Of a stretch of DNA of 64,000 nucleotides, positions 17,198-61,209 are shown one piece after another (within the stretch, counting starts at the first letter, position 1; each line of letters starts with the position of its first letter). The notes under the pieces were generated by a model, which saw only the letters and a list, made by a program, of their open reading frames with translations, did no database searches and was not told the origin of the DNA. The translations under genes were made by a program, and so were the position numbers. Location: IMG/VR virus record IMGVR_UViG_3300018891_000001, positions 151,871 through 215,870 of that record; one strand, 5' to 3'.

Positions 17198-17265
17198 TCT
17201 AGTATCCTCCCTTTATATGTTTCTTTTTTTCACCCAATAACCCGGAGGGTTTGTAATACATTACA

Positions 17266-17294
17266 ATAATAACAGAATAAACATGATCTTACAA
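17266..17294 (-). promoter_or_regulatory. sigma-A promoter of dnaN, with the operator overlapping +1
   Basis: TTGTAA-N17-TATTAT (TG-extended), followed by the palindrome at 17252-17265. Confidence 0.6.
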
Positions 17295-17303
17295 CATCTG
17301 ATG

Positions 17304-19390
17304 CTATTTGCAAGAGATTTCTTGCTGTTTTCTCTTGCGTTCTTCTAACCACTCTTTTGCGCTTTGTAATCCTCGGAAATGACATCCTCTTTTTGTCCAT
17401 TCGTATATATACTCATGGGAAGTAATGTCATAAAGGAGAATCAAATTGTAACTGCAGTATAATGCTAAAATGTCATGTCCTTCACAATTCGTAGTAATAA
17501 TCCCCTTCCATTTTTTACTCGGAAGGGGAAGTTTACCTTCAAAAGCTCGAGTTAAACATTCATAAATTTGCTTCATAATAGCCATCTCACACCCTTCATG
17601 ATTTTCATATTTACGGTTTTAATGTATATTCCTATTCCCATGAATCTAAATCATCATCATCGTGTTGGATGGAGTGTGGCTTAGTTTGTTGTATGTAGAG
17701 ATATAAATCGAATAATTCTTCTGCTTCTGGTTCAGGTTTCTCCAACAACTGTTTTTTATGCTTTAAAAATTCCCGCAAAGGAACAAAAGGATACACTTTT
17801 AAATCTGTGTCTACATCACCTTCGGTTCCTTCTGGGGTGGAATATGTGTAACAACCTGTTTCAAATAAAAGATAGTAAATACCATTGGGGAGTTCTTCGA
17901 TTTGATCAAGATCATCACAAAGAACTACTTCCCGAAACACTTCCTCAGCATAATTTATATCCCTCCCGTAAGCTCTTGAATCCGGCTAGTTGCATAATAA
18001 TAAAGAGAACGAGCTTCATCAATATCTTTAGCCAACCACAATTTTTCTTCCATTTCTTCTTTTAGCTGTTTTAGTTCATTTTTTATCTCATCAATATTTA
18101 AAATTCGGGATTTAATGTATTCATCAGCCGGTGAACCTTCAGATATTCTCTGATATTGAAAAATTCGGGATTTAATGTATTCATCAGCCGGTGAACCTTC
18201 AGATATTCTCTGATATTGAAAAGTATCTTCACAGCCTCTAAAGAGTTTAGAAATAGCGATTTTATGAGGTTCTTTTTGATTTTCAAGATGTCTGATTTGT
18301 TTTTCTAATTCCCTGATTTGTTGGTCAATATCTTTAATGGCATTAAAATGAGGCTGCAAATTATTTTGAACAATAAACTCTTGTTTGAGCTCTTCCTTTC
18401 GCTGTGCTAATACATCTCGTCGGTCATAGAGAATATCATTGATTTTACCCTCAATCATATCAATCAGTTTCTCAATACGTTTTGCATCTAATCCTCGGTC
18501 ATGACGAATAATTTGTGTAGTCATGATTATCCCTCCCAATGTCCATGACGTTTTAATATTTCAATGACTTCATTGATATAAGGCTCATCCATGTTAATTA
18601 CAATATAGCTATTCAGTTTTTTTCCTTCTTCTATGCGACCTTTGTTGATTTCCTCGCATAAATCACGTAAATACATCTTCTGTGTTTCCCAACCGTATTT
18701 CTCTACATCTTCTGTTTTTAATACAATGTATTTTGGGTGTTGTTTGATTTCTTGAATGGTTGAATCAATCATACTTTCCTTCCTTTCGAATCACCAGTTG
18801 ATGGTACAGCTGCTATCACTCTCAAAATATGGCTGAATAACTTCTTCCACTCGATAAAATACATCATTGTAATAAAAAACATTGCGATTTTGGAAATCAC
18901 GTAGCTCTGGATACCCTTCGATTTTTTCCACTTTTAAAATGATGAGGTGTTCATCAATATTTTCTAGATTTTCATAGTCCCAATCACTTGAAATTTCGTC
19001 TAACTCTTGTTCCAATTCATGTTTGTCTGCATAAAACTCTATCTCATCACTATAATTATTGATGACAATATAGTGCATCGCTTCCTCTCGATCCATCTCA
19101 GCGTAAAAGGCATCTCGACAGGAACGGCATTCATAATAATTCCCTGTTTGAAAAGAACCATAATCATGTTTTTCATGATAACATAATTCCTCGGTAGAAC
19201 CGCATTTTCTGCATTTTTGTTCAATTTCAAAAGCTTCTAACGGCAGTGAATTAATGTAACGATGTGAGTCCAGGTAGGCATATTTATCACTGGCTCCGCA
19301 ATACAGACATTCTGTTCCTTCAAAGTTTTCTGGTAATACACGACCGCAACGGTATTTTGAACAGTATTTCATCATAATCCTCCTTACCAT
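17304..19390 (-). other. Five hypothetical genes (17304-17585, 17632-17940, 17955-18539 coiled coil, 18527-18772, 18791-19390 Cys-rich)
   Basis: Packed - strand ORFs with SD sequences. Confidence 0.55.
18101..18222. repeat. Exact 60-bp in-frame tandem duplication
   Basis: AAATTCGGGA...TGATATTGAA occurs twice; peptide FQYQRISEGSPADEYIKSRI x2. Confidence 0.95.
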
Positions 19391-19441
19391 TTATTCCATT
19401 TCTGTTTCCTATTGCCTACTTCAAATAGAAGGAGCGACCTC

Positions 19442-21883
19442 TTATAAAGCAAAGAGGTCTAGCTCCTGTTGCCCCTCAATAACTTGCTTCCGCTTTGGTA
19501 CACCCTTATTGTATTCTCTAACGTTTTCTACTTTCTTGATGACAGAATCAAACATGGATAAATAATCGTCAATGGCTTTACGAGTCCGACGAACATCTTC
19601 TTTTGTTGCACGACCGACCTTTGCTTCTTCTTCTACAAAGCGAATCAATCCTTGAGCAATCTTACGTACTGTATCAATACCGCCTTCAATTGGATTCATG
19701 ATATAACCTTCATAATCCTGAAACTCCACAGCTTGCATTTCCTCAAAGGACTGATTTTTGCGGGCAAAGATATCATGTACCGTTTCAATATCTTCAAAGA
19801 CATTATCATTAAGGAGCTGTTTGGCTAATGCATTCATGCCGTCAGAACTATCTGCCATGGCACGCAATCCTTCTTCAGAGAATTTTCCTTGCATAGCCAT
19901 AGCTGCATCAATTTTGCGAGCAATATGTTTGAGAGCTTTCTCTTGAATCGTATCACGATACACATAGGTGTATACTTTTACATCTTTCGTTTGTTTGAGT
20001 CGCCATGAACGACGAGAGGCCTGCATGTAATCATATGTGGAATAATCCAATTGGAAAAAGTGGATATTTGGAAAAGCAAGTAAATCTAATCCAACTTTCA
20101 CCAATCGTGGATTGGTAATAAGAATGTCCCAATCGTGTTTCTCCATCATTCCATGAAGCCATTGTTCCCGTTGTTGAGAATTCTTTGGCATTCGAATCCC
20201 GTCATAGCTTCCACCATTTCGAAGAATTCCTACATTATAACCTCGACGTTTGAATTCTTCATACAAGTAAATATCCACTTGATTCCATGCTTCTTTTCCG
20301 GTGTATTTGACATAAATCAGATTCTTGCGACCATGCTGATAAATTTCATCATCAATAATGCGGATCAATTGTTCTACTTTTCTTGGCACAAAATTTACTG
20401 GATCAAAAGTACGAGGAACTCCAAGAATATGACGATGTCCATCTTTATCATATGTGACAATTTCTTCTACATTAAATGGTGTATCCGCATACTGATACAT
20501 GGCATTGATAAAGGTAGAAATACTATTCATGCCACCTAACCCTTCTGTTGAACGCATGGTTACGGCGACATCATGTGCAATTTGTCGATAAGCATCATGG
20601 TGTTCAGAACTCATATCTACCACTACCGGGATTTCTCGATATGGCGGTAATGCATATCCCATGTCATTTAGTTCTAAGAAGGCACAATTATTCATCAGAT
20701 GCATCGGGAATAAATGTGGTGAAATACCTGGTTTTTGTGAAGTCGTACGACGAATGCGACCATCTCGTGCACGAGTACTTCGCTCATTAATTCCATATCG
20801 ACGATTAAAGAGTGATTCATCTTGATACGTAATGCCTTCCCGAAGAAGTCCTTTTGGATTTAAGCGAGCTAGTAAATAAAAAATATCTCGAGCCATTCCA
20901 CCCATTAATGTCCCCGTTAGCAAAATTTGTTTTTCAGTATGGTTCACTAATTGGCCAAATGCAGTACCTGTTGTAGAATCTCCACTTTTGTACTCATGAA
21001 CTTCATCAGCAATTAGGTATTTAAAGAATCCTCTTGGTAATTTCTTATTGATATACCAAGCTGGAGATACTTTTCGATATCCAGAATCCAGTGGAAGTTT
21101 TTCTGGCTGCCATAATACATATCCGCATTCTTGTTCCTCATCTGCCGGCACCCAACGATTACTATTGTAATCCAACTTCCATTCCTTAATTTCCTCTTTT
21201 GGTAAAAGAGAAGTTGGAACTTTGTTTCGGCAGCGATAATTTTCTTTGGTCATATTCTTTACCCAGTTCTTTGATGACTTGTTGTAAGTTTCAAAGAAAT
21301 GTTCTTCTGCATATTCACCGCCACGTTCGAATAATGGATTCCCACACTTTGGACAATAAAAACTGGTTTCGCCTACCGAATAAAACACATCAGGTCTTCC
21401 GCTCTCATAATTCCAGACTTCGTTTCGAATCATGCGAACACGATACTCAGGATGAACAACTTGATGCATGCCATCTCCTCGTCGAACATGTCGAATTTGT
21501 TCAGGTTCTACGTCCTCTACAGAACGGAATGTAATATCAGATTTATGAACACGCCAATCTTTGATAGGCTCCATCGGATAAGTAAACTTGGACAACTCAG
21601 AGCTCATGATGTAATATTCCCATTTCTCCGGTTTCTTGTATTTTATTTTTCCTTTTGCATCCATGTATTGGTTTTGTTCCTGGATTCGTTTTACGTCTAA
21701 CCAATGTTGAATAATATGTGTTTCTACATTCGGTATTCGTTCTTTAATTTCCCGTGCCCATTTTTCTACCATAATGGAAGGACACAGGACAATAACCCGC
21801 TGTGGTTGAGGATTGGTTTCTACGTTTTGCAGCATTGCTTCTGTGATGTATGGAACTACTTCACCCATTGTGGTTTTACCTGT
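19442..21883 (-). CDS. SF2 (SNF2-like) helicase, exon 2
   Basis: Begins TGKTT after the intron; DEVH, LLTGT, GLDL, QASRRSWR. Confidence 0.85.
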   Translation of the reverse strand, partial: TGKTTMGEVVPYITEAMLQNVETNPQPQRVIVLCPSIMVEKWAREIKERIPNVETHIIQHWLDVKRIQEQNQYMDAKGKIKYKKPEKWEYYIMSSELSKFTYPMEPIKDWRVHKSDITFRSVEDVEPEQIRHVRRGDGMHQVVHPEYRVRMIRNEVWNYESGRPDVFYSVGETSFYCPKCGNPLFERGGEYAEEHFFETYNKSSKNWVKNMTKENYRCRNKVPTSLLPKEEIKEWKLDYNSNRWVPADEEQECGYVLWQPEKLPLDSGYRKVSPAWYINKKLPRGFFKYLIADEVHEYKSGDSTTGTAFGQLVNHTEKQILLTGTLMGGMARDIFYLLARLNPKGLLREGITYQDESLFNRRYGINERSTRARDGRIRRTTSQKPGISPHLFPMHLMNNCAFLELNDMGYALPPYREIPVVVDMSSEHHDAYRQIAHDVAVTMRSTEGLGGMNSISTFINAMYQYADTPFNVEEIVTYDKDGHRHILGVPRTFDPVNFVPRKVEQLIRIIDDEIYQHGRKNLIYVKYTGKEAWNQVDIYLYEEFKRRGYNVGILRNGGSYDGIRMPKNSQQREQWLHGMMEKHDWDILITNPRLVKVGLDLLAFPNIHFFQLDYSTYDYMQASRRSWRLKQTKDVKVYTYVYRDTIQEKALKHIARKIDAAMAMQGKFSEEGLRAMADSSDGMNALAKQLLNDNVFEDIETVHDIFARKNQSFEEMQAVEFQDYEGYIMNPIEGGIDTVRKIAQGLIRFVEEEAKVGRATKEDVRRTRKAIDDYLSMFDSVIKKVENVREYNKGVPKRKQVIEGQQELDLFAL

Positions 21884-22979
21884 CGATACCTTCTAGGTCG
21901 GGAATTTAACCCAACCACTCCCCTTTCGGAGAGGACGAGACTATATCATCACTCAGGCTCGGAGACAGCCTTCATCGTGTCGGGCGCTCGTGTCGGGTTT
22001 ATTGGTCGGCATCCTCACCCGTTAGTCGTTGAACCTTCCTAGCTACTCAAGTGCCATTCGCTAGGCTTGGCTGCTGATTGCCATATCCTTTCGGACTTAG
22101 GTTTCCAGCAATTCACCCGATTTTACATGGGCTACAGGATAATGTTTTCGTTCCAGATAAATCGTTGCATTGTTGTAGAGGAAATTTACAAATTTCGCAT
22201 ACAATCCATTTCCACCGAATCGATAACCAAATGCTCTTCCATTCTCTTTGTATTTTTCTCTTAGTGGCAATCCGTGTTCATGTAGAACTTTGGAATAAGC
22301 ATCTAGGAATTCTTTTGTACCAATCACTTCTATATTCACTTGAGGTCTGGAATTATCTCTCGGATCATAGAAGTAATGAATGCTTCCATCTCCATCGAAA
22401 TATCCTCTCATAAAATGATGCAATAAATGATGTGGCACTTGCTCTTCTGTTGGGAATTGCAAGGTCAATGATTTGGCAGGCGTACAGCCTTTATCAATTA
22501 AATCCTGTACAATTTCCATCGATACGAGTTGTAATCGATAGCATAGATGACCATTCACGTTTCTTGGTTTGATGTCCATTTCAGGAGAGATAAAATCTCG
22601 AAATCGCTCAAGATGATTAACATCTTTTTCAGATAAGCTTAGTTCCAATGTTCCCCGTGGTTCATAAACTGAGCCATCGGCATATAAGAAGCCTAACCAA
22701 TATGCTTTTTCCTCGGTATCGATTACTTTAAACGCATCGGTGTTGTGATTGTATTTACTTCTTCCTGTTGTCATCCCTCTGGATTTTATCTGTATCCCAT
22801 CTGCTTTTAACATTTGGGATAATTTCTTGCGGTCAAAACCTGTGAGCTCTGAAATCTTTCTCAACGATTTACCTTCCAAAAACATTTGCTTTGCCATTTC
22901 ATACATGTTATCACTCCCATAGGTATATTTCCTATACCCATAATAACATGCTATGAAATGCATTACGACCTGTTTGTTA
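21884..22979 (-). ncRNA. Group I intron (1096 nt) in the helicase Walker A motif
   Basis: 5' exon ends in U, intron ends in G; P GAATTGCTGGAAAC, Q AATCAGCAG, R TTCAACGACTA, S ATGATATAGTC; IGS GCCCAU and P10 CCUGU. Confidence 0.92.
22097..22906 (-). CDS. Intron-encoded LAGLIDADG homing endonuclease with N-terminal HTH
   Basis: YWLGFLYADGS and FMRGYFDGDGS; GGGAG SD before ATG 22906. Confidence 0.9.
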   Translation of the reverse strand: MYEMAKQMFLEGKSLRKISELTGFDRKKLSQMLKADGIQIKSRGMTTGRSKYNHNTDAFKVIDTEEKAYWLGFLYADGSVYEPRGTLELSLSEKDVNHLERFRDFISPEMDIKPRNVNGHLCYRLQLVSMEIVQDLIDKGCTPAKSLTLQFPTEEQVPHHLLHHFMRGYFDGDGSIHYFYDPRDNSRPQVNIEVIGTKEFLDAYSKVLHEHGLPLREKYKENGRAFGYRFGGNGLYAKFVNFLYNNATIYLERKHYPVAHVKSGELLET

Positions 22980-23993
22980 ACCCATTTCTCCAACGATAAA
23001 ACAAAAATCATCTTCCACCAATGTTTTAGAAACACCCATAACAGTATTGGCTTGCGGTGGATATAGACCTGTAATTCCTTGCTGATTGGCACATAAATTC
23101 ACATCACGAAAAGCGGGATGATGTCGTTCTTTCTCCGGATCAAAACGAACAGCAATATTCTCTTGGATACGTTTTCCTAGCTCTGGTGCAAAGTGAGTTA
23201 AATAATCATCAATCGTCTGACAATGAGGTAATATGGATTGACTTTCATCTCGGCCATCTTCTTCAATTGCAAAGTTTAACTCATATCCTTGAACTCCTTC
23301 TGAGATAATGTTTTCTAGCTGTTCTTCTGTAATCATAAGAAGTCCTGCTTCTAGAGAATAATTGGAACCAAAACACTTCACGGTAAGAGGTGTATAATAA
23401 CCTTCCTCTTCTAGTCGTTCGACAATATAATCAGTCCATTCCTCTAGCATTGGTGTATTATATCGGTCATTCAGAACATGAAACACTTGTTTTTTGTAAT
23501 TACCATCCCATGCCAAAATGAGTTCAGCTAAATGGCTTGGAATAGATTCTGGATCTAGACCTTGATTGATTCGTTCTCTTTGTTCTGCTAACCATTGATT
23601 ACGTGCTTTTAAATCTGGTTTTGCATTTTTGGCCACCATCAAAATATGAGTTAAATCATCAACTTTTAATACCTCTTCATCATACGGCTTTTTAGACGTA
23701 GGAATAGCAAAAACACTATGACGAATAAATCCTGTTTCGTATCGATTTCCTTCAGCACGATAAATTTGTCCCGTTTTTCCATCTTGCATAAGCCATGCGG
23801 CTTGCTTTACTTTGGAATCCACACCAATCAAATTGGCTAAATAGATGACATTATCGCTATCTGTCACAAGTAGATCACAATAGGCTATGCCGCTTGAAGA
23901 ATGACGGTTATACATTTCTAATGTATATATTTCCGGCATATAAAGGCGTGGCATTTCTTTCACCTCTTTGTTTGTATTTTTTAGGCTTCCCAT
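22980..23993 (-). CDS. SF2 helicase, exon 1 (ends FIVGEMG)
   Basis: LYPPQ Q-motif-like sequence; joins TGKT in frame after splicing. Confidence 0.85.
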
Positions 23994-24165
23994 ATTTTGA
24001 TTTCATTTCTTATCCATCGTTTTTCAATATTTCGTTGATGTTTATTACGGCGACGCTTATCTTTCCCTTTTACTCGTGGTGTTGGGTATTGCCCATCTTT
24101 TGTCCAATCCCAGTTACCATATGTTTTATTGGTTTCAATTTTAATTTGACGGTACATGTAATCAC

Positions 24166-26010: not shown

Positions 26011-26055
26011 TTGTAATGCATTACAAATTATATCATAAAAGTTAGGGAAAAGCAA
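26011..26055 (-). promoter_or_regulatory. sigma-A promoter with a perfect palindromic operator at +1
   Basis: TTGCTT-N17-TATAAT (TG-extended), then TTGTAATGCATTACAA. Confidence 0.75.
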
Positions 26056-27858: not shown

Positions 27859-29232
27859 TTAGACATGAGTATCCCCCTTTTGTTTGTAATAGGCTACTTT
27901 ATCTCTTAGAGATTCGTAAGACATTACAAAAAGCTCTGCATATTGTCTTGTTAAGATATCCAGTTGAATCGGATCTTGTTCTTCAGCCAATAATTTAACG
28001 ACTCTTTCTATGCGATCTCCTTGAATTTCTCCAATACGGGCATAATGATATAGGATTTCATCTTGCTGTTCTCGGTAAACTTTTTCTACTCGCCATTGAG
28101 TTAATGTGCGAGTTCTCTTTTGAATGCATTTGGAAAGAGCATCGTCTAATAAGCCATATGTGCGACAAAGTGTGTCTGGATCATGTCCATCAGGAAGCGG
28201 GCATACTTGAACAGATAATCCATGTTTCATTAAAATTAGGGCATCTTTTTCCATAGCCCGTAATCCAGCATCATCTCCATCTCTCATAAGTAATACATGC
28301 ATAGCTCCAGCTCGTTTTAAAAGTTGCACATGCTGTTCACTTAAATTGATTCCCATGGTAGAAACGGCATTACGAATACCATGTCGATGAAGCTGAATAA
28401 CATCGGTAAAGCCTTCAACAAGAGTAGCTCTTTTCCATTGAGAAATGTAGCTTTTGGCTTGGTAGATACCATACAAATAATAATTTCGATCGAACTCGGG
28501 ATAGGGATGATTTCGAAGATATTCTTTATTGACGTATTTTTCTGTTAATGGCCATCGATGATCATACTTAGGAGTGATTCGTTTTCCTTCTGCTTTTTGT
28601 TTTTCATTTAACTCCGCTAAGGCAGTAGCACCAAACGGCACACGTCCCGTAAATGAAATAATATCTCCATAATAGTCATGAATCGGAAACGTGATTTTCC
28701 CTTTGGTATTTAAAAATTCTTGGTCTTCTCCATCACCGAAACCTAATCCCCAAATGTGAATGTCTAAATCTTCAATGCCACGGTTTCGAAGATACTTATA
28801 GGCATCCGGGTGTTGAAGCAAATTCTGTTGAAATCGTTGTTGAGCACGAAGACATTTTTCTACCCACCATTGATGTTGATTTAAACGATATTGCTGCTGT
28901 GGGTCAAGAGCGGGAAGGGGTACATTGAGATATTTGGCCAACCATTCGATAGCTTGACCTAAATTGCAGTTAAAATACCCTTTAATAAAGCCGTACACAT
29001 CCGAAGATGTAGCACGGCTATGGGTTGCACTTCCCGCACCACACCCATTACATGACCACGTATTGGTTTCAGGTTTAATCATCAAACTAGGCCGATCATC
29101 ATCATGAAATGGACAATGAGCGACATAGTTAATGCCAGATGATTTTACCCCACCAATAATGGTATTGATGACTTCATGTACAGGTGCAATCGATTTAAGA
29201 TACTCCTTAAAGTCATCTGGGTACTTTGGCAC
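27859..29232 (-). CDS. dnaG: DNA primase
   Basis: CPFHDD.RPS..C.GCG Zn finger; VEGFTDV; DGDDAG; DPD; AAGGAGG SD before GTG 29232. Confidence 0.93.
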   Translation of the reverse strand: MPKYPDDFKEYLKSIAPVHEVINTIIGGVKSSGINYVAHCPFHDDDRPSLMIKPETNTWSCNGCGAGSATHSRATSSDVYGFIKGYFNCNLGQAIEWLAKYLNVPLPALDPQQQYRLNQHQWWVEKCLRAQQRFQQNLLQHPDAYKYLRNRGIEDLDIHIWGLGFGDGEDQEFLNTKGKITFPIHDYYGDIISFTGRVPFGATALAELNEKQKAEGKRITPKYDHRWPLTEKYVNKEYLRNHPYPEFDRNYYLYGIYQAKSYISQWKRATLVEGFTDVIQLHRHGIRNAVSTMGINLSEQHVQLLKRAGAMHVLLMRDGDDAGLRAMEKDALILMKHGLSVQVCPLPDGHDPDTLCRTYGLLDDALSKCIQKRTRTLTQWRVEKVYREQQDEILYHYARIGEIQGDRIERVVKLLAEEQDPIQLDILTRQYAELFVMSYESLRDKVAYYKQKGDTHV

Positions 29233-29314
29233 GGTGTTCTCCTCCTTATATTCAGTTTTCCCCAAATGCCCCGGAGGGGCCATCAAAGCATTCGTGTAAT
29301 AAAAATCTTTGTGC

Positions 29315-38952: not shown

Positions 38953-40584
38953 TTATCCTAAATCAAGGTCCGGAAAATCTACCTCAACCAATTTTGCTTT
39001 GGTATCAGCAGCGGCATGCAACAATTTATGTTCTTCACTAGAAGCACATTTAGCAGAATGTTTTGCCCAATTACGAAGATTAGTTAACAATTCCGGATTT
39101 CGCTTAGATAATGGAACAATCTTCGAAATTTGTCCTAGTAAATCCTCTTGACGAATATAATGAGTAGCTCGATTGCCTTTTCGATAATCGGCATATGCTC
39201 GTCTACCTGCCTCCGATACAACTTGTTCGATTTCAGCACCAGTAAAATCCTCAGAGTTTTTAGCCAATTCTACAATTTGCGCCTCACTAAAGCAGTTTTC
39301 TTCTTGAGAGACATTACAAATTTTATATCCACGTTTTGTTAAATGAATTTTATAGATTTCTTCCCGTTCAGTCTGAGCAGGAAGTGAGACGAAGAAAATA
39401 TCATCAAAACGACCTGCACGAGTTAGTTCTGCAGGAAGCTTTGTAATATCGTTCGCTGTTGCAATAACGAATACTGGAGCCTCTTTATCAGAAAGCCATG
39501 TCAATAACGTCTGAATGACACGAGAAGTCGTGCCTCCATCCGATTTATCCGAAGAAGACATACCGGCTAATGCCTTTTCAAATTCATCTATCCATAACAC
39601 GCAAGGCGATACACTTTCCGCTAATTTCAATGCACGGTCAATATTCTTTTCTGATTGACCTACTTTAGAATCCATAATATCGCTCATGTTCATTTTCAAA
39701 AGCGGTAAATTCCACATATGAGCAACTGATTTGGCTGTTAAAGATTTTCCGACACCCGGAAATCCAGCTACAACAACTCCACGAACCGGATCAATGCCAT
39801 ATTCTTTTGCTTCATGTTCAAATGCATATTGAGCATCAGCAAACCAGTCTTTTAATATATCCATACCACCAACATGGTCCATGTTTCCTAATTTTGTAAC
39901 ATACTCTAATAGACCAGTCTTTTTAATGACTTGTTCTTTTTCAGCGACAATTTCGTCTAGTACAATCTTTTTATGTTTAGCAACGGACTTTTTTAGTACA
40001 TTGATAATTTCTGATTTCGTCATTCCAATTAATGCATTAATAATCGCTACACGATCACGGCCTTCTGGAACTGGTAAATCTTTTGAAAGAAGAAAGGTTT
40101 CCATGCCACGAAGCTGTTCTTCTACTTGCTCACGAGTTGGTAATTCATAAGTAACAACTGTAATAAGTTTTTCTAGTTCCATCGGAATATTAATTTGCGG
40201 AGATACCAAAAGAATCGGCTTATAGATATTATCCTGTTTTTCCAAAATATCACGAAGACGACGCTTTGCTTGGAAATTTGTCCAGATGTCATGAAAATCC
40301 TTGATAACAAATGCAGCTGGCTTATCGTAATTCTCAATAAAATCCAACAATTTTACAGGATCATATAGTTTTTGAAATAGATCATTTGTAATTAAATCTT
40401 TTAATCCAGATGTAATACTCCATGTATAAGATTCAATACCTTTTGCCTCAATAATGGTTTTTAAGTCCTCTTGAAACCGTTCTTCCTCGAATGTATGGAC
40501 TAAAATAGAACGACGACGGGAATTCATTAATGTTGAAATTTCCTCAATACCAGTCATTTTCTTAACAATTGCCTGCGACATCAT
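38953..40584 (-). CDS. Ycf46-like AAA+ ATPase
   Basis: T.EE.R, KDFH, VGGMD.LK.W, GFPGVGKS, IDEFEK, RAGRFD, FTGAEIEQ. Confidence 0.88.
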   Translation of the reverse strand: MMSQAIVKKMTGIEEISTLMNSRRRSILVHTFEEERFQEDLKTIIEAKGIESYTWSITSGLKDLITNDLFQKLYDPVKLLDFIENYDKPAAFVIKDFHDIWTNFQAKRRLRDILEKQDNIYKPILLVSPQINIPMELEKLITVVTYELPTREQVEEQLRGMETFLLSKDLPVPEGRDRVAIINALIGMTKSEIINVLKKSVAKHKKIVLDEIVAEKEQVIKKTGLLEYVTKLGNMDHVGGMDILKDWFADAQYAFEHEAKEYGIDPVRGVVVAGFPGVGKSLTAKSVAHMWNLPLLKMNMSDIMDSKVGQSEKNIDRALKLAESVSPCVLWIDEFEKALAGMSSSDKSDGGTTSRVIQTLLTWLSDKEAPVFVIATANDITKLPAELTRAGRFDDIFFVSLPAQTEREEIYKIHLTKRGYKICNVSQEENCFSEAQIVELAKNSEDFTGAEIEQVVSEAGRRAYADYRKGNRATHYIRQEDLLGQISKIVPLSKRNPELLTNLRNWAKHSAKCASSEEHKLLHAAADTKAKLVEVDFPDLDLG

Positions 40585-40639
40585 TAATTCCTCCTTAATA
40601 AGTGCTTTTTCCGATAAATGTCCCGGAGGGACGCTTTCC

Positions 40640-44298: not shown

Positions 44299-45690
44299 TT
44301 AAGATTCAATGATTTCAGTAGAAACAATATAAGTATTGTCTTCATCAAAGAAAAATTCATCCGTGTGATCATAACCATTCACAATATCCCGGCTAATGAC
44401 CACACCGTCACAAACTATGTCACCATGAACTGTTAATTTATCCACTAAGTCTTCTGGTTGAACTTCTGCATCTTTTAAATTGTAGTACCGTAAAGCGATG
44501 TCTAACACGACACGAAGTTTTTTCTCAGCCATTTGATTCCACTCCTTCTTCTTCGTTTTCCTCTTGATTTTCCGCTAAATCCCCCGGAGGGGTAGAAGAA
44601 AAAGCTCCTTCTGATTTTAAAATACCAATAATGTCGTCAATGATTTCCCATCCTGTCTGAACAGAACTATCTTTAATCCAATCACTACGTTTTTTGACAG
44701 CATCAATATGAGATTCTGTTGGTTCAATTCCATTTTGCTGTAACATAGAGGCAATATCTTCACGATGCCATCTGATAACAGCCACTGTATCTGGATCATT
44801 AGAAATAATTTCATAAGAATGAGATTCTAAGATATTTTCCACTTTACGTAACATTTCACCCCATAATTCCTGATCATCTATTGGAATCCCATAAGAAGAT
44901 AGAGCACTTAAAACTTGAATAGCTACTTGTTGACTCATCATAAAACCTCCTTTAGAATTCACCATTAAAAATAAATTCAATCTGCCCAGAAGACTCATAT
45001 CTTTCTTCCATAAAGCGCACCATTGTATCAATCATTTCTAAAAAGTAAAAATCATGAGTTTGTTGAAATTCTCTTTGTGCTTCATCTAATGGTGAACCGA
45101 AACTTATGGCTTCGCCAATTACATTTCCTTCACTATCATGGTATAAAGTCTGACCTTCATACTGTTGTGGAAGTTCTATAAATTCTTTGAATAACTGATC
45201 AAAATTGCGGCTTTTCAAATATTCTTTTAACGCCGGTACATCATCCATAGTTAATGTCAATGAATCACCATAATCATCATAACTATAAGATCCTAATCCT
45301 AGCTCTTCATAAATTCGACCCTGTTCACTACTTTGACGTGCAAATACATACTTCCATACGTATTCACCATCGCAATAAATATAACGACCCATTTGATTTC
45401 CTCCTTAATTAAGTAATGCATTACTTTATTTCTCTTTCGTGTATTGTAAAATACACATACGTTCCGTAATATATTGATTTATCCTCATGGACTTTCACAT
45501 GAGGATATTGTTTTTGAAAGTGTTCTACATCTTGAATGCTCAATATACAAAGAGGTACGCCTGTTACAGACACACGAGTATTTCCAGACCATCCTTCTTT
45601 TTGTAGTTTTCGAATATTTTCATGCATTTCTTCCACATCATTGTGAAACACTTCAATGACTTCCTTATGACGTTTCTGAACAATCTGCAT
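44299..45690 (-). other. Four hypothetical genes (44299-44532, 44525-44941, 44952-45392, 45421-45690)
   Basis: Packed ORFs with SD. Confidence 0.55.
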
Positions 45691-51858: not shown

Positions 51859-52377
51859 TTATTTTGTTTTCACTATATAAGCAACTGTTCCATCATCGAG
51901 AGGTTGTGACACAACAATCTTTCTTGGATCCAAACCTGCTTGAGCGGCATGAGCTTTTCGAAGTTCTTCTTCTAATTGATCAATTTTTTGATAAAGTAAT
52001 TCCTTATCCCTCTTGAGTTGCTCAATTTGTGCCTCTTTGGTTTTTAATATCGTTTCAAAGCGATTTGCACTTGAACTCAATTCATCAATCATCTTAAAAA
52101 TCTCATGCACTTGCTTGTCCGGATCCGGAATCCCATAATATACGATTTCATTGGATTCCGATTTCTCTACAGATGGAACAATGCCTATGACCCCCTGTTT
52201 ACGTAATTTTTTCACAGCACGATGAACTGTGGCTTCACTGAGTCCCAATTTTTCACCGATTTGCTTCATAGGCTCCCGTATTGGGCCCTCTTTCCTTTCG
52301 GTTTGTTCTTTAATATACTGGTAAACCTGAATTTCACTTTGACTCAGAATTTCCAATACCTGTTCTTCTGTCAACAT
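51859..52377 (-). CDS. Winged-HTH regulator with coiled coil
   Basis: MKQIGEKLGLSEATVHRAVKKLRKQGVI. Confidence 0.8.
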   Translation of the reverse strand: MLTEEQVLEILSQSEIQVYQYIKEQTERKEGPIREPMKQIGEKLGLSEATVHRAVKKLRKQGVIGIVPSVEKSESNEIVYYGIPDPDKQVHEIFKMIDELSSSANRFETILKTKEAQIEQLKRDKELLYQKIDQLEEELRKAHAAQAGLDPRKIVVSQPLDDGTVAYIVKTK

Positions 52378-52399: not shown

Positions 52400-52760
52400 T
52401 TTGTAATACATTACACATTATGAGTGATTATCTAGTAATATACCTCATTTAAAAATAATTTAAACATAATGCATTACAGTTTATCAAGGATTTTCGACAA
52501 TTAGGTATATTTTACTTTAAATTCCTTTAAAATCCTGCGATTTATAGGACTTTATTCCTGCCTACTTGTTTAAATATACCCTTTTCAGCAATAAGTGTCA
52601 ATATTTCAAGGATAAACTATATTTCGCAAATTTCGACGTTAATCGACAGAACGTATGTTCCCATCAACTGTTCTGGTATTAATATACTCTGTTCGGTAAT
52701 AAGTGTCAATAGTTTGATAGCCTATCATATTTCGCAAATTTCGACATTCACCGACAAAAT
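52400..52760 (-). promoter_or_regulatory. Complex control region: duplicated sigma-A promoters, LexA box, Spo0A boxes, two operators
   Basis: TTGACA-N17-TATATT at 52573-52601 and 52681-52709; GAACGTATGTTC at 52649-60; TGTCGAA at 52493-99 and 52740-46. Confidence 0.75.
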
Positions 52761-53072: not shown

Positions 53073-53087
53073 TTGTTACGAACTCCT

Positions 53088-53702: not shown

Positions 53703-53740
53703 CTTGACCCCTCCTCACATAAGGGAGCAAAAAGCTCCCT

Positions 53741-55316: not shown

Positions 55317-55390
55317 TCCATTCTATATACGGCAAAATATGACGAGGTATTATAGGAAATACATCAAAGGGGGAACATCCCCCCTTTGTT

Positions 55391-56143
55391 TTAAGCTCCT
55401 TGTGGTGGGGCTGGCGGAAATCCGCCATTTGGTGCACCTACTGGAGCTCCATAACCGCCACCTGGTGGGTTAGGTGGAAATCCTCCTTGCGGAGCAGGAG
55501 GTGTATTTGATTGCGCCGGATTTGGCGGGAATCCTCCTCCTTGTGGTGGAGCCGGAGGTGGTGTAAATCCTCCCTGTTGCTGTTGTGGAGATGGATTGAA
55601 ATTACCTTGTGGCGGTGCTTGGAATCCACCTTGATACTGTCCTGTTGGTTGTTGTTGTGCTCCTTCACTGCCTTTTGGCATTTCTAATCCTACAAGCTCA
55701 GTAACTTTAATAGTTGGATAATAACTATAAGAACCATCTTGATTCTTTTGTTGGCGAAGTTCAGGGATTCCTTCTACGAACACTCGACGACCTTTCGGAC
55801 AATGATTAATCAAGAAATTATATTTACTATCGGCTCCTTCGTTGCCCCATACTTCAATAAACCAAAAATCAGTTCCTGCTTTTTCGCTACGATGATTAAT
55901 TGCGATCTTAGATGTACCCACTTTTGAATTGTTTACTATTTTTGAAGTTGGATCCTGGGTTAAACGTCCAATGACTTTGATTTTGGCATAATTATCAAAT
56001 CCAGAGCCATTACGTTGACCATTAGATTGCTGATCCATCGGATAGCCGCCTTGATTTGGATACCCTTGATTTGAGTACCCTTGATTTCCATAAGACTGAT
56101 TTCCATAAGACTGATTTCCATAAGGTTGACCGTAGTTATTCAT
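55391..56143 (-). CDS. ssb: Single-stranded DNA-binding protein with low-complexity tails
   Basis: IGRLTQDP, TDFW.IEVWG, KG..V.VEG OB-fold. Confidence 0.85.
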   Translation of the reverse strand: MNNYGQPYGNQSYGNQSYGNQGYSNQGYPNQGGYPMDQQSNGQRNGSGFDNYAKIKVIGRLTQDPTSKIVNNSKVGTSKIAINHRSEKAGTDFWFIEVWGNEGADSKYNFLINHCPKGRRVFVEGIPELRQQKNQDGSYSYYPTIKVTELVGLEMPKGSEGAQQQPTGQYQGGFQAPPQGNFNPSPQQQQGGFTPPPAPPQGGGFPPNPAQSNTPPAPQGGFPPNPPGGGYGAPVGAPNGGFPPAPPQGA

Positions 56144-56179
56144 GTCATATACCTCCTAAAATAAAAAATTATTTTTCAC

Positions 56180-57013: not shown

Positions 57014-57027
57014 GTCTCCAACTCCTT

Positions 57028-57713
57028 TTATTTCTTATCCAGAATTTTGACTTGCACCATTACATCCCCCATTGAAACATGAGCATGAGGTACGTAATAG
57101 TCGATATCATACCCTTTGATCAAGCGACCTGTATCATCTGCTCGACGCTTTTCAGTGCGTCCATCCGGCCATTTAATAAGCACCCACGTACCAAGCGGAA
57201 TAATATTAGGATCTACAGCAATTGTAACTCCTTCTTCAGTAGGTCGCCCACTCGCAGTAATGCCATAGCCCGGATCGCCTGGACGTTTTCCAGTAGACTG
57301 ATAGTTATTATCATAAAAGGTTAAACGAAAATAAATCCATTCCCCTTCTCGTTGACCACGGAAAACTACGGGGTGCTTTTGAACTTTTTTTCTAATTCAG
57401 CTACCTTTTGCCTATAAACCTCTAATCTTCTCCGGAGGTCTTCAGTCTCCTTAGTTAGTCGATCGATTTCCATTTCAGACTGCTCTAATAAACCATTCAC
57501 CTTTTTCATTTCCTGATGTAATTGTTGATTTTCTTGAAAAAGGTCTTCATTTTTTTCAAGCACTTCTGTGTACTTTTCGCTCAACTTTTCGTGAGACTTA
57601 CGAACCTGTTTTAAGTCACTTTTGAACGAATAAAAATGAAGGGCTAGAGCAATAGAAGAAACCGTCGTTCCTGCTAGAATTAAGCGAGTTATCGTACGTG
57701 TCTTCTTCTTCAT
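57028..57713 (-). CDS. Membrane-anchored coiled-coil plus 3D-domain (lytic transglycosylase-like) protein via predicted -1 frameshift (~228 aa)
   Basis: A_AAA_AAG at 57390-57384; -1 frame encodes GITASG..IAVDP.IIPLG..ADDTG.LIKG..ID and has no start codon of its own upstream of the domain. Confidence 0.8.
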
Positions 57714-57819
57714 GCTTCGACTCCTTTATTTTATTCCCCTGTATCACTTCTCCCCAAGTTTATCATAAAACTTGGGGTAAATGCAAGGCATTACATCAAT
57801 ATATTACTTGTAATGCCTA

Positions 57820-59382
57820 TCAATAAAATATTTTCTTTAATAAAGAAAAAGTTTTCCCTAACTCTTGAAAGCATTGATAATCAATACAATAAATAATGTA
57901 AGCTAAAATTAGTTTGCATGCTTCTTCATTATTGTCTTTAGGAAATAAATATCCGCTTTGATAGATCTGTTGCTTAAATACATCACGTGTGATTCCACAT
58001 TCTTTTTCGATAAAAGAAGCAATTTCAGGGGTAGCTTTGATTCCTTGTTCGTTCCATAATTGAATAACATAGCAGCATTGAAAAAACAAAGAGGTGCTCA
58101 TGTATTGGTGCACTAATTCCATGTATTCACCTATACAAGTTGTTCTATTAGATCATGGTATTCCTCGCTTAATTCACCTTTCAATTCAGATAATATGTGA
58201 TCAAGCCCATAAAATCCCCAGCAACTATCAATGTGTTCTCCTTCATGTGTTTCAAGAATGTACCCGTAAATGTCTCCAGTTAAGTACTGATCATAAGTTT
58301 TGACTTCGGCTTCCAAAATATCTTCAGCTTGTTGAAGAGTCAAACCCTCTTTTTCTAAATCTTTTACAGGCACATAAATATATCCTACTTGTCCACTATC
58401 CCATGGACATGAAAAAGGAGAAGTTCTCATAGTAATCCCGCTGTGATCATATAAATAAAGCGGCAACATAACTACATGCTCCTCAATGGTATCCATTAAT
58501 TCGTCCATGCTCATTTCTTCCAATACTTCTTCTTCAAGTTCAGCTAATTCCATAGCTAGACTCTCTAAGAAATGACGAGGATCCGAATACGAATGAGAAT
58601 CACCTAAGTTATATCGATGATGAAAACAAACCATGGTACCTAAATTATCAAAATCTTGTCGTGGACTCCGAGCATCATCATCTTGTACAATCTTTAAAAT
58701 AAAATGTTCATTTTCAGCTTGTCGAACCACATAGCTCATCATTATGGCCTCCTTTTTATTGGTTTATTTTTTAATTGAGCATAGGCTCAAAATACAAACC
58801 TTGTTTGTCTTTGTTAATCATTATTCTTTTGTCTTTTTGCTTTCTTAAACTGTTGTTTTCCATAATAATAAGCAGCTTTTCCGACATCTCGACTTAATTG
58901 ACGTAAAAGAGCTGCTCCAGCCATTAGAGCAGCTTTTATCAGTACTTGCTTCATTCCTGATTCTCCTTCTCATGAGTTTCTGCAACACCCATTATTTCTT
59001 TTAAATCAGATAGCGGAAGAGCTTCATCATACAGATCAAAATATTCAAATTCCTCATAATACGGTGCCACAAAATCATGTACAACTTTATGAAAATCCGG
59101 CACTAGATCATAAGAAATGCGACCATCCTCATCCAGATACATAGGTTTATAATTCTTTGGATCGCATTCGTTAATCAGATTAAGATGTTCATCAAAAATC
59201 ATAAAATCGACATGATCACCAGGAATCATAAAATAGCAAATTTCCGGCAAAAAATAAGGCTGATATTGTTCTTGAATCAGCTTAGGAAAATGATTAGCAA
59301 AATCCTCTCGCAAATTATCGATATATTGCTGTTTTATTTTAAGATATTCTTGATGCAAGCGTTGAGTTACTTCTGAGTACAC
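57820..59382 (-). other. Hypothetical genes (57820-58122, 58131-58742, 58951-59382)
   Basis: ORFs with SD; 58131 carries a LYLYDHSG...WDSGQVG motif. Confidence 0.55.
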
Positions 59383-59397
59383 GAAGAAACCCTCCTT

Positions 59398-60570
59398 TTA
59401 TAAAACTAATACCAATTTATCACTAGAGCGAGTAATGGCTGTATATAACCAGCGATGATGTTCCTCGACACTTAGTACTTCATTAATAACCACTACTTTT
59501 TCCCACTGGGAGCCTTGCGATTTATGGCAAGTAATCACATATCCAAAATCAAATTCACAATAAACATTGTACTCATACGGAAGCAATTGATACTTATTTC
59601 CTTTGAAATGATCTTCAAGTAAATACAATTGTTCAAAACATTCATCTGTAAAATCAGGTTGGAATTTGATTTCAAATGCATCACGGGTAATTTCATAATT
59701 CTTTTCAAGTTCTTTCACTTCTTTTACAAATCCCGTCATACCATTGACTAAGCTGATCTCATGTATGTTTTTGCCCCAATTGTTTCGGGTGCAAATCAAT
59801 TTATCTCCCACTTGTGGAAGATCATCCGTAAAACCCAAATATCGACGAATGTCCTGATTTAAAGACTGACGTGTGCGATTATAACCACAAATAATTTGAT
59901 CGGCCGTCGTATACACCTTTTCTCGAATTGCCAGCCAGTCTCGCTGATTAATGACCAACACTTCCTTGCCGTACCATCCATAATCAATCTTTTTCTTGGT
60001 GCGAGCCAGCATGGATAAATGAATAATGGGGTTCCCTTCAGCTTGTCGGTGAATCTCCGTTAATGCAAAATCGGGATTATGAAACATTTGAACAAATTCT
60101 TCATTGCCCGCTTGAGAAACCGGTGGGAGTTGCCCCTGATCTCCGATAAACAAAATCTTTTTACCAAATGAACGCAAATCTTCCATAATCTGTCCATCCA
60201 CCATCGAAGCCTCATCGATCACAATGAGCTTGATATGAGCAAGTTCTTCTTTTTCTTTTTTAACAAATTGTGGCTTCCCTTTTGTATCGACATCCAATTT
60301 GTAAATTAATCGGTGAATGGTTTGGGCACGATAGCGGCCATCGGCTTTTTGTGTAAGCACCAGAGCTGCCTTTCCGGTATAGCAAGCAAATGCTACTCGA
60401 TTCAATCGTAAACCTAATTGTTCAATCACATAATTGACTAATGTAGACTTCCCGGTTCCGGCATATCCTGCGAGAAAAAATGTATCTTTTGAACTATGTT
60501 TATACCAATGTACAATCCGATTAACAGCTTCTTGTTGCATCGGAGTTAATATAATTGAAGATACTGTCAT
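59398..60570 (-). CDS. RecD/Dda-like SF1B helicase
   Basis: GYAGTGKS, IDEASM, GD.GQLPPV, LTEIHRQ, TCHKSQGSQW, LYTAITR. Confidence 0.9.
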   Translation of the reverse strand: MTVSSIILTPMQQEAVNRIVHWYKHSSKDTFFLAGYAGTGKSTLVNYVIEQLGLRLNRVAFACYTGKAALVLTQKADGRYRAQTIHRLIYKLDVDTKGKPQFVKKEKEELAHIKLIVIDEASMVDGQIMEDLRSFGKKILFIGDQGQLPPVSQAGNEEFVQMFHNPDFALTEIHRQAEGNPIIHLSMLARTKKKIDYGWYGKEVLVINQRDWLAIREKVYTTADQIICGYNRTRQSLNQDIRRYLGFTDDLPQVGDKLICTRNNWGKNIHEISLVNGMTGFVKEVKELEKNYEITRDAFEIKFQPDFTDECFEQLYLLEDHFKGNKYQLLPYEYNVYCEFDFGYVITCHKSQGSQWEKVVVINEVLSVEEHHRWLYTAITRSSDKLVLVL

Positions 60571-60634
60571 TTTAAATCCTCCTTACATGAGATCACCACC
60601 TATATTTCCACGAAATTCCCCGGAGGGGGGAAGG

Positions 60635-61051
60635 TTATTCTAAAACATAAAATGTGCCTTCAATTAATTCTTTCATGGTCATCACATTATCAGGGGACAT
60701 CAGAATCGCCATAAATGGATTGTCTTGCGATACAAATGAAATATCCTCGTTTTTTTGTAAAATGCGGTAAAACTCGCCAACTTGCACTTTGACTTTTTTA
60801 CCTTCTTTATAAGCAGTTAAAAACTCCTGAAGTGATACTTCTTTTTGCGCTTCAATGAGTTGAACTCTAGTGTTTAATAAATCTTTTATAAGCACAATCG
60901 GCTCTCCAGTACGACAATTCACAATCATGTCATCAACTTTTGCAACCGTCATGCCATACAAACTGTTATCTGTTGTGACCCGTGCTTTTTGTCCGTTTGG
61001 AAAATGATCTGAAAGTAAATCAAAAAGTGTAATAGATTTTGTTGATGTCAT
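60635..61051 (-). CDS. Hypothetical protein
   Basis: AAGGAG SD. Confidence 0.6.
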   Translation of the reverse strand: MTSTKSITLFDLLSDHFPNGQKARVTTDNSLYGMTVAKVDDMIVNCRTGEPIVLIKDLLNTRVQLIEAQKEVSLQEFLTAYKEGKKVKVQVGEFYRILQKNEDISFVSQDNPFMAILMSPDNVMTMKELIEGTFYVLE

Positions 61052-61209
61052 TCTTACTGCTCCTTTACTATATTTTCACCAAACACCCCGGAGGGGGACT
61101 ATGATGGTTTATTTTCTTTTCCTTCTCCTAAGCTATTATAAAAATCTCTAAATTCTGATGAAACATTTACTGCCTTATAAATGCGTATATTAATAGCACC
61201 CTCTCCCGA

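What the first reader, a model, noticed from the sequence alone, without database searches (positions are those of the whole stretch)
17241..61095. Oriented CCCTCCGGG leader motif 36-51 nt upstream of seven genes, mostly replication genes
Seen: CCCGGAGGG occurs on + at 17241, 29270, 40622, 44583, 56187, 60619 and 61087; I saw none in the opposite orientation. On the mRNA strand it extends to about CCCTCCGGG-nnATTT-n(1-3)G(n)GAAA. It precedes dnaN, dnaG, the AAA ATPase, the 44299 gene ahead of the Gam-like gene, ssb, the RecD-like helicase and 60635. Chance expectation for this GC-rich 9-mer is far below one per window. At dnaN it lies just downstream of a sigma-A promoter, hence inside the transcript. 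Inference: an RNA signal (CCC-UCC-GGG mini-hairpin whose CCCUCC is an anti-SD able to pair with the nearby GGAGG) defining a post-transcriptional regulon or a nut-like antitermination site. A polar DNA motif for the element's FtsK is an alternative (KOPS is GGGNAGGG).
Basis: partly seen in the sequence, partly recalled or inferred. Interest (0 to 1): 0.78.

Follow-up and report, generated by a model that had tools for sequence, protein, structure and literature searches.

The report
Hairpin promoters of a jumbo phage
The repeated CCCTCCGGG signal is real and is most likely a set of small DNA-hairpin promoters, built like those of coliphage N4, that this 216-kb Bacillus-type phage uses with its own unusual RNA polymerase to switch on its replication genes.

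Summary
CCCGGAGGG occurs 7 times on + and never on - (0.1 expected). The window is the last 64 kb of a 215,870-bp biocrust jumbo phage. The whole genome has 15 copies of a 25-nt element, all in one 74-kb leftward non-structural module. On the mRNA strand it reads: 5-bp stem, TCC loop, stem, RTTT, g, GTGAAAA, then a 20-48 nt leader with SD and start codon.

The stem covaries (C-G x9, G-C x6, no mismatch). Relatives keep the architecture with different stems and loops. All loops read G-N(-N)-A on the template strand, the classic stable DNA mini-hairpin.

The geometry matches N4 virion-RNAP promoters P1-P3, read here from the N4 genome.

The copies start just downstream of a 1158-aa YonO/RdRP-family (PF05183) RNA polymerase gene. 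Phage 0305phi8-36 has that polymerase family and 19 one-strand hairpins. These are probably its published but untested "21-bp promoter candidates".

Best reading: template-strand hairpin promoters for the phage's own polymerase. It is inferred, since no RNA data exist. The anti-SD, nut and FtsK/KOPS ideas are not supported.

The parts
17227..17251 (-). Hairpin-promoter-like element (AACCC-TCC-GGGTT + ATTGG-GTGAAAA), 43 nt before the ATG of dnaN (15869-17197). It abuts the palindrome at 17252-17265.
   Evidence: (37.6 bits)
29256..29280 (-). Element (GCCCC-TCC-GGGGC + ATTTG-GGGAAAA) before the GTG start (29232) of DnaG primase (27859-29232).
   Evidence: (37.6 bits)
40608..40632 (-). Element (GTCCC-TCC-GGGAC + ATTTA-TCGGAAAA) before the AAA ATPase gene (38953-40584).
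   Evidence: (33.3 bits)
44569..44593 (-). Element before the 77-aa ORF 44299-44532. It lies inside the last codons of the upstream ORF 44525-45031.
   Evidence: 35.3 bits
56173..56197 (-). Element before the SSB gene (55391-56143). Stem pair 4 is a C.A mismatch on the mRNA strand, which is a T.G wobble on the template strand.
   Evidence: (36.5 bits)
60605..60629 (-). Element before the PIF1/RecD-like helicase gene (59398-60570). A relative also has its own version of the hairpin before its PIF1-family helicase gene.
   Evidence: (37.2 bits)
61073..61097 (-). Element before the 138-aa ORF 60635-61051.
   Evidence: 39.3 bits

Best explanation
Each copy is a phage-specific promoter of the DNA-hairpin type. 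On the template (+) strand the sequence 5'-nnCCC-GGA-GGGnn-3' (or GCC...GGC) can extrude as a 5-bp stem. Its G-N-A triloop is closed by 5'C:G3', the unusually stable DNA mini-hairpin. On the mRNA strand the stem is followed by RTTT and then by G-GTGAAAA. By analogy with coliphage N4, the hairpin is the recognition element and the A/T-rich four bases act as a spacer. RNA synthesis would then start at the G five or six bases after the stem, giving 20-48 nt leaders that hold the SD. The enzyme is most likely the phage's own sigma-less single-chain two-barrel RNA polymerase of the YonO/RdRP family (PF05183; 1158 aa; genome 14188-17664, minus strand). Its gene heads the same leftward module, and the first copies lie immediately downstream of it, as with T7 gene 1 and its promoters. 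Host RNA polymerase would make the enzyme early. The enzyme would then turn on the small takeover genes and the replication genes (dnaN, dnaG, SSB, helicases). Shown here: the motif set, its strand and position bias, stem covariation, conservation of the architecture in relatives, the match to the N4 promoter layout, and the presence and catalytic motif of the polymerase. Inferred: that the DNA rather than the RNA hairpin is the active form, where the start site lies, and which polymerase reads it.
For: (1) There are 15 copies, all on one strand and all in the 74-kb leftward module. None lies in the ~134-kb rightward module that holds the structural genes. (2) Stem covariation: 90.7% of cells are paired and the covariation score is 0.448 against 0.119 in shuffles (0 of 500 reach it). 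Pair 3 is C-G x9 and G-C x6 with no mismatch. Slid-register controls collapse. (3) Relatives whose polymerase is 63, 62, 58, 51, 34, 32, 30 or ~23% identical carry their own hairpin on the coding strand downstream of that gene. The loops are TACC/TGCC, TCC, T(A/G)TC, T(A/G)AC and TCGC, and the stems differ completely. Two sites upstream of the same 348-aa gene in L040 and L041 differ by a double compensatory change, GCACT..AGTGC against GCCCT..AGGGC. (4) Every loop reads G-N(-N)-A on the template strand: GGA, GGTA, GGCA, GATA, GTTA, GCGA. On the RNA strand they would be UCC, UACC and the like, which to my knowledge are not among the stable RNA loop families. (5) N4 P1-P3, read from EF056009, are GTTGC-TTC-GCAAC-TTAT-G, GAAGC-TCC-GCTTC-TTTT-GG and GCTGC-TCC-GCAGC-TTTT-GGT. 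They share the 5-bp stem, TCC loop, closing C:G pair, T-rich 4-mer and G start. The N4 rules are set out in PMC4496689. Hairpin stability is about -5 kcal/mol, the same as N4 P2. (6) The polymerase scores E 1e-8 and 34.8 bits against PF05183 (cut-off 23.8). Its GGADxDGDT motif aligns with the DNDGD of YonO. (7) 0305phi8-36 has only this polymerase family (gp99). It has no homologue of the second giant polymerase, yet it carries 19 one-strand CGT-TCGC-ACG hairpins. Hardies et al. 2007 proposed 14 phage-specific 21-bp promoter candidates for gp99 in that phage (PMC2147016). (8) Placement is conserved: a hairpin stands before dnaN in G001, before dnaG in 0305phi8-36 and before the PIF1-family helicase gene in L119. 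(9) Canonical intrinsic terminators are separate, larger hairpins. Sigma-70-like promoter matches are not enriched in the two 20-kb stretches scanned.
Against: There are no transcript data. No RNA run was listed, so the start site and even the promoter role are untested. Pairing alone cannot separate a DNA hairpin from an RNA hairpin. The G-N-A loop argument and the three C.A mismatches (template T.G) against one T.G are suggestive only. In 0305phi8-36 two hairpins lie upstream of the polymerase gene itself, which does not fit a simple model in which the enzyme is made first and its promoters lie downstream. SPbeta-type YonO loci show no such hairpins, so the rule is not general to the YonO family. 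Some sigma-A-like promoters do exist within the module.
Confidence: 0.6

Rival explanations
1. The elements are hairpin promoters, but they are read by the other phage polymerase. This is a 2304-aa protein at the tape-measure position (genome 68191-75102, +). It could be delivered with the virion, as N4 vRNAP, crAss gp66 or the P23-45 TMP-fused RNAP are.
For: Its C-terminal half has the beta'-type signature RYPTFH...NADSDGD and a beta-like FKF..GEK block, invariant across 22 homologues. The AF2 model (pLDDT 79.5, pTM 0.73) matches RNAP large subunits in the PDB at E ~1e-7. It sits between homologues of 0305phi8-36 gp145 and gp147, where that phage has its tape-measure protein gp146, a virion protein by mass spectrometry. 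N4 vRNAP and crAss gp66 both prefer single-stranded templates.
Against: 0305phi8-36 has the hairpins but no homologue of this protein and no second DxDGD ORF. In this phage the copies begin only downstream of the YonO-like gene and spread over 74 kb that includes replication genes. That is a wide span for a set of very first genes.
Confidence: 0.12
2. The hairpin acts in the RNA. It could be a leader stem-loop plus a single-stranded AUUUGGUGAAAA box, recognised by a phage RNA-binding protein or endonuclease. The function would be processing, stabilisation, translational control or antitermination.
For: Covariation fits RNA pairing equally well. The element always lies upstream of an SD. Several copies follow directly on an upstream gene with no terminator between, so they would be transcribed by read-through.
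Against: The anti-SD CCUCC is absent from relatives. The loops UCC, UACC, UAUC and UCGC are not among the stable RNA loop families known to me, whereas their complements are the classic DNA G-N(-N)-A loops. There is a point-by-point match to N4 DNA promoters. No Rfam family matches. The element tracks the polymerase gene across lineages.
Confidence: 0.15
3. It is a duplex operator or activator site for a dimeric DNA-binding protein that steers host RNA polymerase.
For: The core is an inverted repeat. A separate 14-bp palindrome regulon shows that the phage does use duplex operators.
Against: The outer stem bases vary freely but stay complementary. A dimer reading bases would not require that. 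The loop and the one-sided downstream box are asymmetric and strand-specific. No -35/-10 pair sits at a fixed distance from the element.
Confidence: 0.07
4. It is a terminator, either intrinsic or specific to the phage polymerase, or an FtsK-orienting polar sequence.
For: There is a hairpin followed by TTT. The phage encodes an FtsK/SpoIIIE-like protein.
Against: The T-run is only 3 bases and is followed by a conserved box. No copy is called as a terminator on its own strand, while true terminators are larger, separate hairpins. Copies are phased to start codons and confined to one module. That does not fit a genome-wide skewed 8-mer.
Confidence: 0.04

Closest known systems
Phage-specific 21-bp promoter candidates of Bacillus phage 0305phi8-36 (Hardies, Thomas and Serwer 2007, PMC2147016)
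   Same: Both are jumbo myoviruses with homologous virion genes (p1400~gp145, lys2147~gp147). Both encode a PF05183 RdRP/YonO-like polymerase at the head of the non-structural arm. Both carry 14-19 co-oriented copies of a ~21-25 nt element ahead of early or middle and replication genes. The architecture I read in EF583821 is the same: variable outer stem, fixed inner stem and loop, T-rich stretch, then G.
   Different: No sequence identity: CGT-TCGC-ACG + TTTTGTA against SCC-TCC-GGS + RTTTgGTGAAAA. The polymerases are only ~23% identical. The 2007 text does not describe a hairpin. I assume, but did not verify against their Figure 6, that their 14 sites are these hairpins. Neither set has been tested experimentally, as far as the held library shows.
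Coliphage N4 virion-RNAP early promoters P1-P3
   Same: Both have a 5-7 bp stem and a 3-nt loop that reads 5'-G-R-A-3' on the template strand (TCC or TTC on the mRNA strand). Both have a 5'C:G3' closing pair, a four-base T-rich spacer on the mRNA strand after the stem, and a G at the expected start. In both, outer stem bases are free as long as they pair. Stability is about -5 kcal/mol.
   Different: The N4 enzyme belongs to the T7 family. No such enzyme was found here: Pfam, PHROGs and PDB-sequence searches of the large proteins tested were negative for one. The model built on this phage's sites does not pick up N4 P1-P3. N4 has 3 sites at one genome end; here there are 15 over 74 kb. Dependence on supercoiling and SSB is unknown.
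SPbeta YonO and its single mapped late-operon start (Forrest et al. 2017, PMC5467207)
   Same: It is a single-chain two-barrel polymerase with a DxDGD motif and no sigma. Its target start site lies downstream of its own gene.
   Different: Its promoter is undefined. 72 SPbeta-type YonO loci show no enrichment of T..C-loop hairpins. YonO drives late genes from one start; here the element precedes early or middle replication genes.
Two-polymerase Thermus phage P23-45 (PMC10770324)
   Same: It has two two-barrel polymerases, one fused to or placed at the tape-measure protein. Each has its own promoter motif, mapped by ONT-cappable-seq and ChIP-seq.
   Different: Its motifs are reported as AT-rich and GC-rich linear motifs. 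The word 'hairpin' does not occur in that text.

Membership tests
N4 vRNAP-type hairpin promoter | Inverted repeat forming a 5-7 bp stem with a 3-nt loop, with outer stem bases free if complementary | tested here: met
   5-bp stem and 3-nt loop; 90.7% of cells paired; C-G/G-C swap with no mismatch; variable outer pairs. N4 sites for comparison.
N4 vRNAP-type hairpin promoter | Template-strand loop 5'-G-R-A-3' closed by 5'C:G3' | tested here: met
   The + strand reads C-GGA-G in all 15 copies. The rule is stated in PMC4496689.
N4 vRNAP-type hairpin promoter | Start site at a fixed distance (loop centre at -11), after four template A's, with +1 C on the template | not testable with these tools
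   The sequence fits: RTTT, then g/G at the right distance. No RNA run was listed.
N4 vRNAP-type hairpin promoter | Read by an N4-like (T7-family) virion RNA polymerase | tested here: not met
   The large proteins tested show no T7/N4-type hit. The only polymerases found are two-barrel enzymes.
N4 vRNAP-type hairpin promoter | Needs negative supercoiling and SSB for hairpin extrusion | not testable with these tools
   Needs biochemistry. The phage does encode an SSB, itself behind one copy.
0305phi8-36-type phage-specific promoter candidates | Ten or more co-oriented copies confined to the non-structural arm, ahead of genes | tested here: met
   15 copies, all in the minus-strand module. 0305phi8-36 has 19 against 0 on the other strand.
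0305phi8-36-type phage-specific promoter candidates | Genome encodes a PF05183 RdRP/YonO-like polymerase at the head of that arm | tested here: met
0305phi8-36-type phage-specific promoter candidates | Motif sequence matches the published 21-bp logo | tested here: not met
   The stem, loop and box differ. Only the architecture is shared. The logo itself could not be read.
Intrinsic terminator | G+C-rich stem followed at once by a run of 5 or more T | tested here: not met
   The run is TTT only. No copy is called on its own strand.
lambda-type nut site | boxA plus boxB hairpin, one per early operon, downstream of the promoter, with an N-like protein | tested here: inconclusive
   15 copies and no conserved upstream box. 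N-like proteins were not searched for.
KOPS / FtsK-orienting polar sequence | Duplex 8-mer skewed genome-wide towards dif, irrespective of genes | tested here: not met
   Confined to 74 kb, phased to start codons, stem covaries.

The most novel reading that the evidence does not exclude
A clade of sigma-less, single-chain two-barrel (YonO/RdRP-like) RNA polymerases of Bacillales jumbo phages recognises extruded template-strand DNA mini-hairpins with G-N(-N)-A loops. This is the same solution that the unrelated T7-family N4 virion polymerase uses. It would be convergent evolution of structure-based promoter recognition. It would also give the first defined promoter class for any YonO-like enzyme.
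Probability: 0.5. Interest if true: 0.8.

Novelty: new member of a known kind. Interest (0 to 1): 0.66.

Why it matters
How YonO-like and other sigma-less two-barrel polymerases find and open promoters is unknown. The SPbeta paper leaves the YonO promoter undefined, and crAss gp66 early transcripts showed no common upstream motif. These data give a concrete hypothesis that an oligonucleotide experiment can test. They supply about 60 natural variants across eight lineages, which already act as a mutational series: free outer stems, fixed G..A loop ends, a T-rich spacer and a G start. If the hypothesis is right, DNA-hairpin promoters are not a peculiarity of N4. They would be a recurrent answer for polymerases that cannot melt duplex DNA. 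It would also reinterpret the untested 2007 promoter candidates of 0305phi8-36. If it is wrong, the element is still a well-defined, strongly covarying regulon signal for the replication genes of a group of jumbo phages.

Tried and rejected
- SPBRE/MrpR operator of SPbeta: a different phage group and a 15-bp duplex site. Dropped.
- Megablast of part of the window, and tblastn of both polymerases, against the phage collection: no match.
- Exact-pattern scan of IMG/VR with the consensus: one chance hit in a 66% G+C contig.
- RNA sequencing runs: none was listed. The DNA runs are biocrust metagenomes, so no start-site mapping was possible and read laying was not used.
- Rfam: nothing at the motif.
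- Covariance model against N4: P1-P3 not recovered, so the likeness is architectural.
- SPbeta P-YonO: I could not convert the published genome coordinate to the phage record. A GGAGA-TTCC-TCTCC hairpin sits at the edge of the published primer pair, but 72 YonO loci show no such pattern. It is treated as coincidence.
- BLASTP, hhalign, Pfam, PHROGs and PDB-sequence searches failed to identify the 2304-aa protein. Motif reading, an alignment-based AF2 model and Foldseek did identify it (then 102-118).
- DNA folding energies do not separate the two strands.
Full report
OBSERVATION. CCCGGAGGG occurs at the seven stated window positions, all on the + strand. Shuffles give 0.10, and there are no near-variants in the window. 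On the mRNA (minus) strand the copies align without gaps over about 25 nt: c-SCCTCCGGS-g-n-R-TTT-g-G-t-G-r-AAAA. Nothing is conserved upstream of this. An SD and a start codon follow. Pfam confirms the downstream genes as dnaN, dnaG, an AAA ATPase, SSB and a PIF1/RecD-like helicase.

CONTEXT. The window is genome 151871-215870 of a 215,870-bp virus record with a 61-bp terminal overlap, so the assembly is circular. It comes from biocrust metagenomes. G+C is about 36%. Genes run rightward from about 20.4 kb to about 158 kb; this module holds the structural genes (tail sheath, virion proteins, a weak portal match). Genes run leftward from about 20 kb through the record junction to about 159.7 kb; this is the non-structural module. 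The whole genome holds 9 exact copies. It also holds 6 copies with GCCTCCGGC and the same downstream box, at 8253, 9540, 10672, 12186, 12681 and 13183. A covariance model built on the 15 sites recovers exactly these at 30-42 bits, all on the minus strand. The next best hit in the phage scores 16.5 bits. No copy lies in the rightward module.

THE HAIRPIN IS SELECTED AS A STRUCTURE. Over the 15 copies, 90.7% of the cells of a 5-bp stem are paired. The covariation score is 0.448 against 0.119 in shuffles (0 of 500 reach it). The third pair is C-G nine times and G-C six times, never mixed. Sliding the partner columns destroys the signal.

RELATIVES. The first copies lie 1-1.5 kb downstream of a 1158-aa ORF (genome 14188-17664, minus). 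This ORF matches Pfam RdRP PF05183 above its curated cut-off. It carries GGADCDGDT, which aligns with the DNDGD of SPbeta YonO. Homologues of this protein were found at 63-51% identity in Logan assemblies and at 30-34% in IMG/VR and JGI contigs. In every contig with enough flank, hairpins of the same build lie downstream of the gene on the coding strand:
- L040, L041 and L119: GCCCT-T(A/G)CC-AGGGC + ATTTTGGTGAAA, with 11 in 20 kb on the coding strand and none on the other.
- L116: CCCAC-TCC-GTGGG, followed six nt later by GTGAAA. L115 has a weaker single candidate, CCTAC-TCC-GTAGG, without a clear box.
- G001: unrelated stems, loop T(A/G)TC, then a T-rich GG.GAA box such as TTTTGGTGAAT.
- L121: GCATGC-T(A/G)AC-GCATGC. 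L123: loop TATC.
Two sites upstream of the same 348-aa gene in L040 and L041 differ by a double compensatory change. G001 is a complete 198-kb relative, with virion genes 45-55% identical to this phage. It has a hairpin directly before dnaN, as here.

PRIOR ART. Bacillus phage 0305phi8-36 encodes the same polymerase family (gp99). It is about 23% identical to the enzyme here, with E 3.5e-8 in a pairwise comparison. Hardies et al. 2007 described 14 phage-specific 21-bp promoter candidates in its non-structural arm. They proposed these as middle promoters for gp99. The text does not mention a hairpin. Reading EF583821, I find CGTTCGCACG 19 times on the coding strand and never on the other. The outer stems vary freely and a T-rich stretch plus GTA follows. 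One copy lies before dnaG. So the finding belongs to a kind that has been noted before but not tested.

WHY A DNA HAIRPIN PROMOTER. On the template strand every lineage's loop reads G-N(-N)-A: GGA, GGTA, GGCA, GATA, GTTA/GTCA, GCGA. In this phage it is closed by 5'C:G3'. That is the stable DNA mini-hairpin. It is also exactly the rule established for N4 virion-RNAP promoters: a template loop 5'-G-R-A-3', a C:G closing pair, the double-strand to single-strand junction at -5/-4, four template A's acting as a ruler, and +1 C on the template. From the N4 genome I read P1 GTTGC-TTC-GCAAC-TTAT-G, P2 GAAGC-TCC-GCTTC-TTTT-GG and P3 GCTGC-TCC-GCAGC-TTTT-GGT. A typical copy here reads CCGCC-TCC-GGCGG-ATTT-GGTGAAAA. 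Predicted DNA hairpin stabilities are alike, -4.9 to -5.3 kcal/mol against -5.2 for N4 P2. If the loop centre is placed at -11, the predicted start is the g/G five or six nt after the stem. That gives leaders of about 20-48 nt. The model built here does not detect the N4 sites. The resemblance is therefore one of architecture, not of sequence family.

WHICH ENZYME. No T7/N4-type polymerase was found among the large proteins tested. A second two-barrel polymerase was found. It is a 2304-aa ORF (genome 68191-75102, +) lying between homologues of 0305phi8-36 gp145 and gp147. That is the position where 0305phi8-36 has its tape-measure protein. It carries RYPTFH...NADSDGD, conserved in G001 and invariant in 22 homologues. 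Its AF2 model (pLDDT 79.5) matches RNA polymerase large subunits in the PDB at E ~1e-7. This recalls the TMP-fused polymerase of P23-45. 0305phi8-36 lacks any homologue of it and has no second DxDGD ORF, yet it has the hairpins. The YonO-like enzyme is therefore the common factor and the more likely reader. This step is inference.

REJECTED READINGS.
- Anti-SD: the loops of relatives lack CCUCC.
- nut: the copy number and placement are promoter-like.
- KOPS: the copies are confined to one module, phased to genes, and covary.
- Terminator: only TTT follows the stem. Real terminators are separate, larger hairpins, and terminator-like sites are enriched over shuffles in their own right.
- Duplex operator: free but complementary outer stem bases, together with an asymmetric loop and box, argue against a dimer that reads bases.
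- An RNA-level role cannot be excluded without transcript data. I give it about 0.15.

LIMITS. No RNA data exist for this phage. The start site, the active strand and the enzyme are all inferred. SPbeta-type YonO loci do not show the pattern, so it is a property of this clade and not of all YonO relatives.

Noticed in passing
window 15847-15860, 17252-17265, 26012-26025, 52402-52415 (and 45413-45424, shorter core); genome 20415, 34020, 74826, 97287, 123353, 131789, 140901, 149128: A second regulon signal: the 14-bp palindrome TGTAATGCATTACA. It occurs 10 times, or 13 with the core GTAATnnATTAC. Several copies lie just downstream of a TATAAT-like -10 box and before an SD, in both gene modules and in the divergent region at about 20.4 kb. 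It looks like an operator on host-type promoters. One copy abuts the hairpin element before dnaN.
   Followed up: partly
L012:8191-15102 (genome 68191-75102, +), outside the window: A 2304-aa protein at the tape-measure position. Its N-terminal part shows DEDDh-like exonuclease motifs by eye, plus a weak Pfam RNase_H_2 hit. Its C-terminal half is a two-barrel RNA polymerase (RYPTFH...NADSDGD; the Foldseek top hits are all RNAP large subunits). It belongs to a family of about 35 clusters of ~2300-aa proteins. It is absent from 0305phi8-36.
   Followed up: yes
window 21917-22212 (-): Rfam group I intron hit (97.5 bits, E 1e-23). It lies between or overlapping the ORFs 19442-21868 (SNF2-like helicase) and 22097-23092, so a gene here may be split.
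   Followed up: no
L009:12700-14188 (genome, minus strand), outside the window: A stretch of about 1.5 kb, mostly non-coding and richer in G+C, lies between the polymerase gene's terminator and the first strong hairpin element. It contains a block (~12745-12830: GGGGAAATTCTACCTTG...TTCACAAAATTGTCACAAAGTGTTC) that is conserved in L115 and L116. No Rfam match.
   Followed up: partly
window 52573-52709 (-): Two tandem near-consensus sigma-70-type promoters (TTGACA-17-TATATT, 11 of 12 each) in the intergenic region upstream of ORF 51859-52377, next to a palindrome copy.
   Followed up: no
window 3898-6204 (+): A 768-aa FtsK/SpoIIIE-family protein (Pfam E 1e-42) on the rightward strand. No link to the motif was found.
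   Followed up: partly
L042:19154-20834 (SPbeta, between yonN and yonK): A 1.7-kb non-coding stretch with long repeated stem modules and an Rfam DUF3800-VIII RNA hit. A GGAGA-TTCC-TCTCC + AGTGTGAAC hairpin lies at the 3' end of the published forward primer used to map the YonO start site. Whether the start lies there could not be checked.
   Followed up: partly
genome 19975-20441 and L040:7196-7727: The divergent region between the two gene modules is conserved between this phage and L040. It holds a sigma-A-like promoter overlapping the palindrome, and a G+C-rich leader of about 140 nt before the first leftward gene.
   Followed up: no
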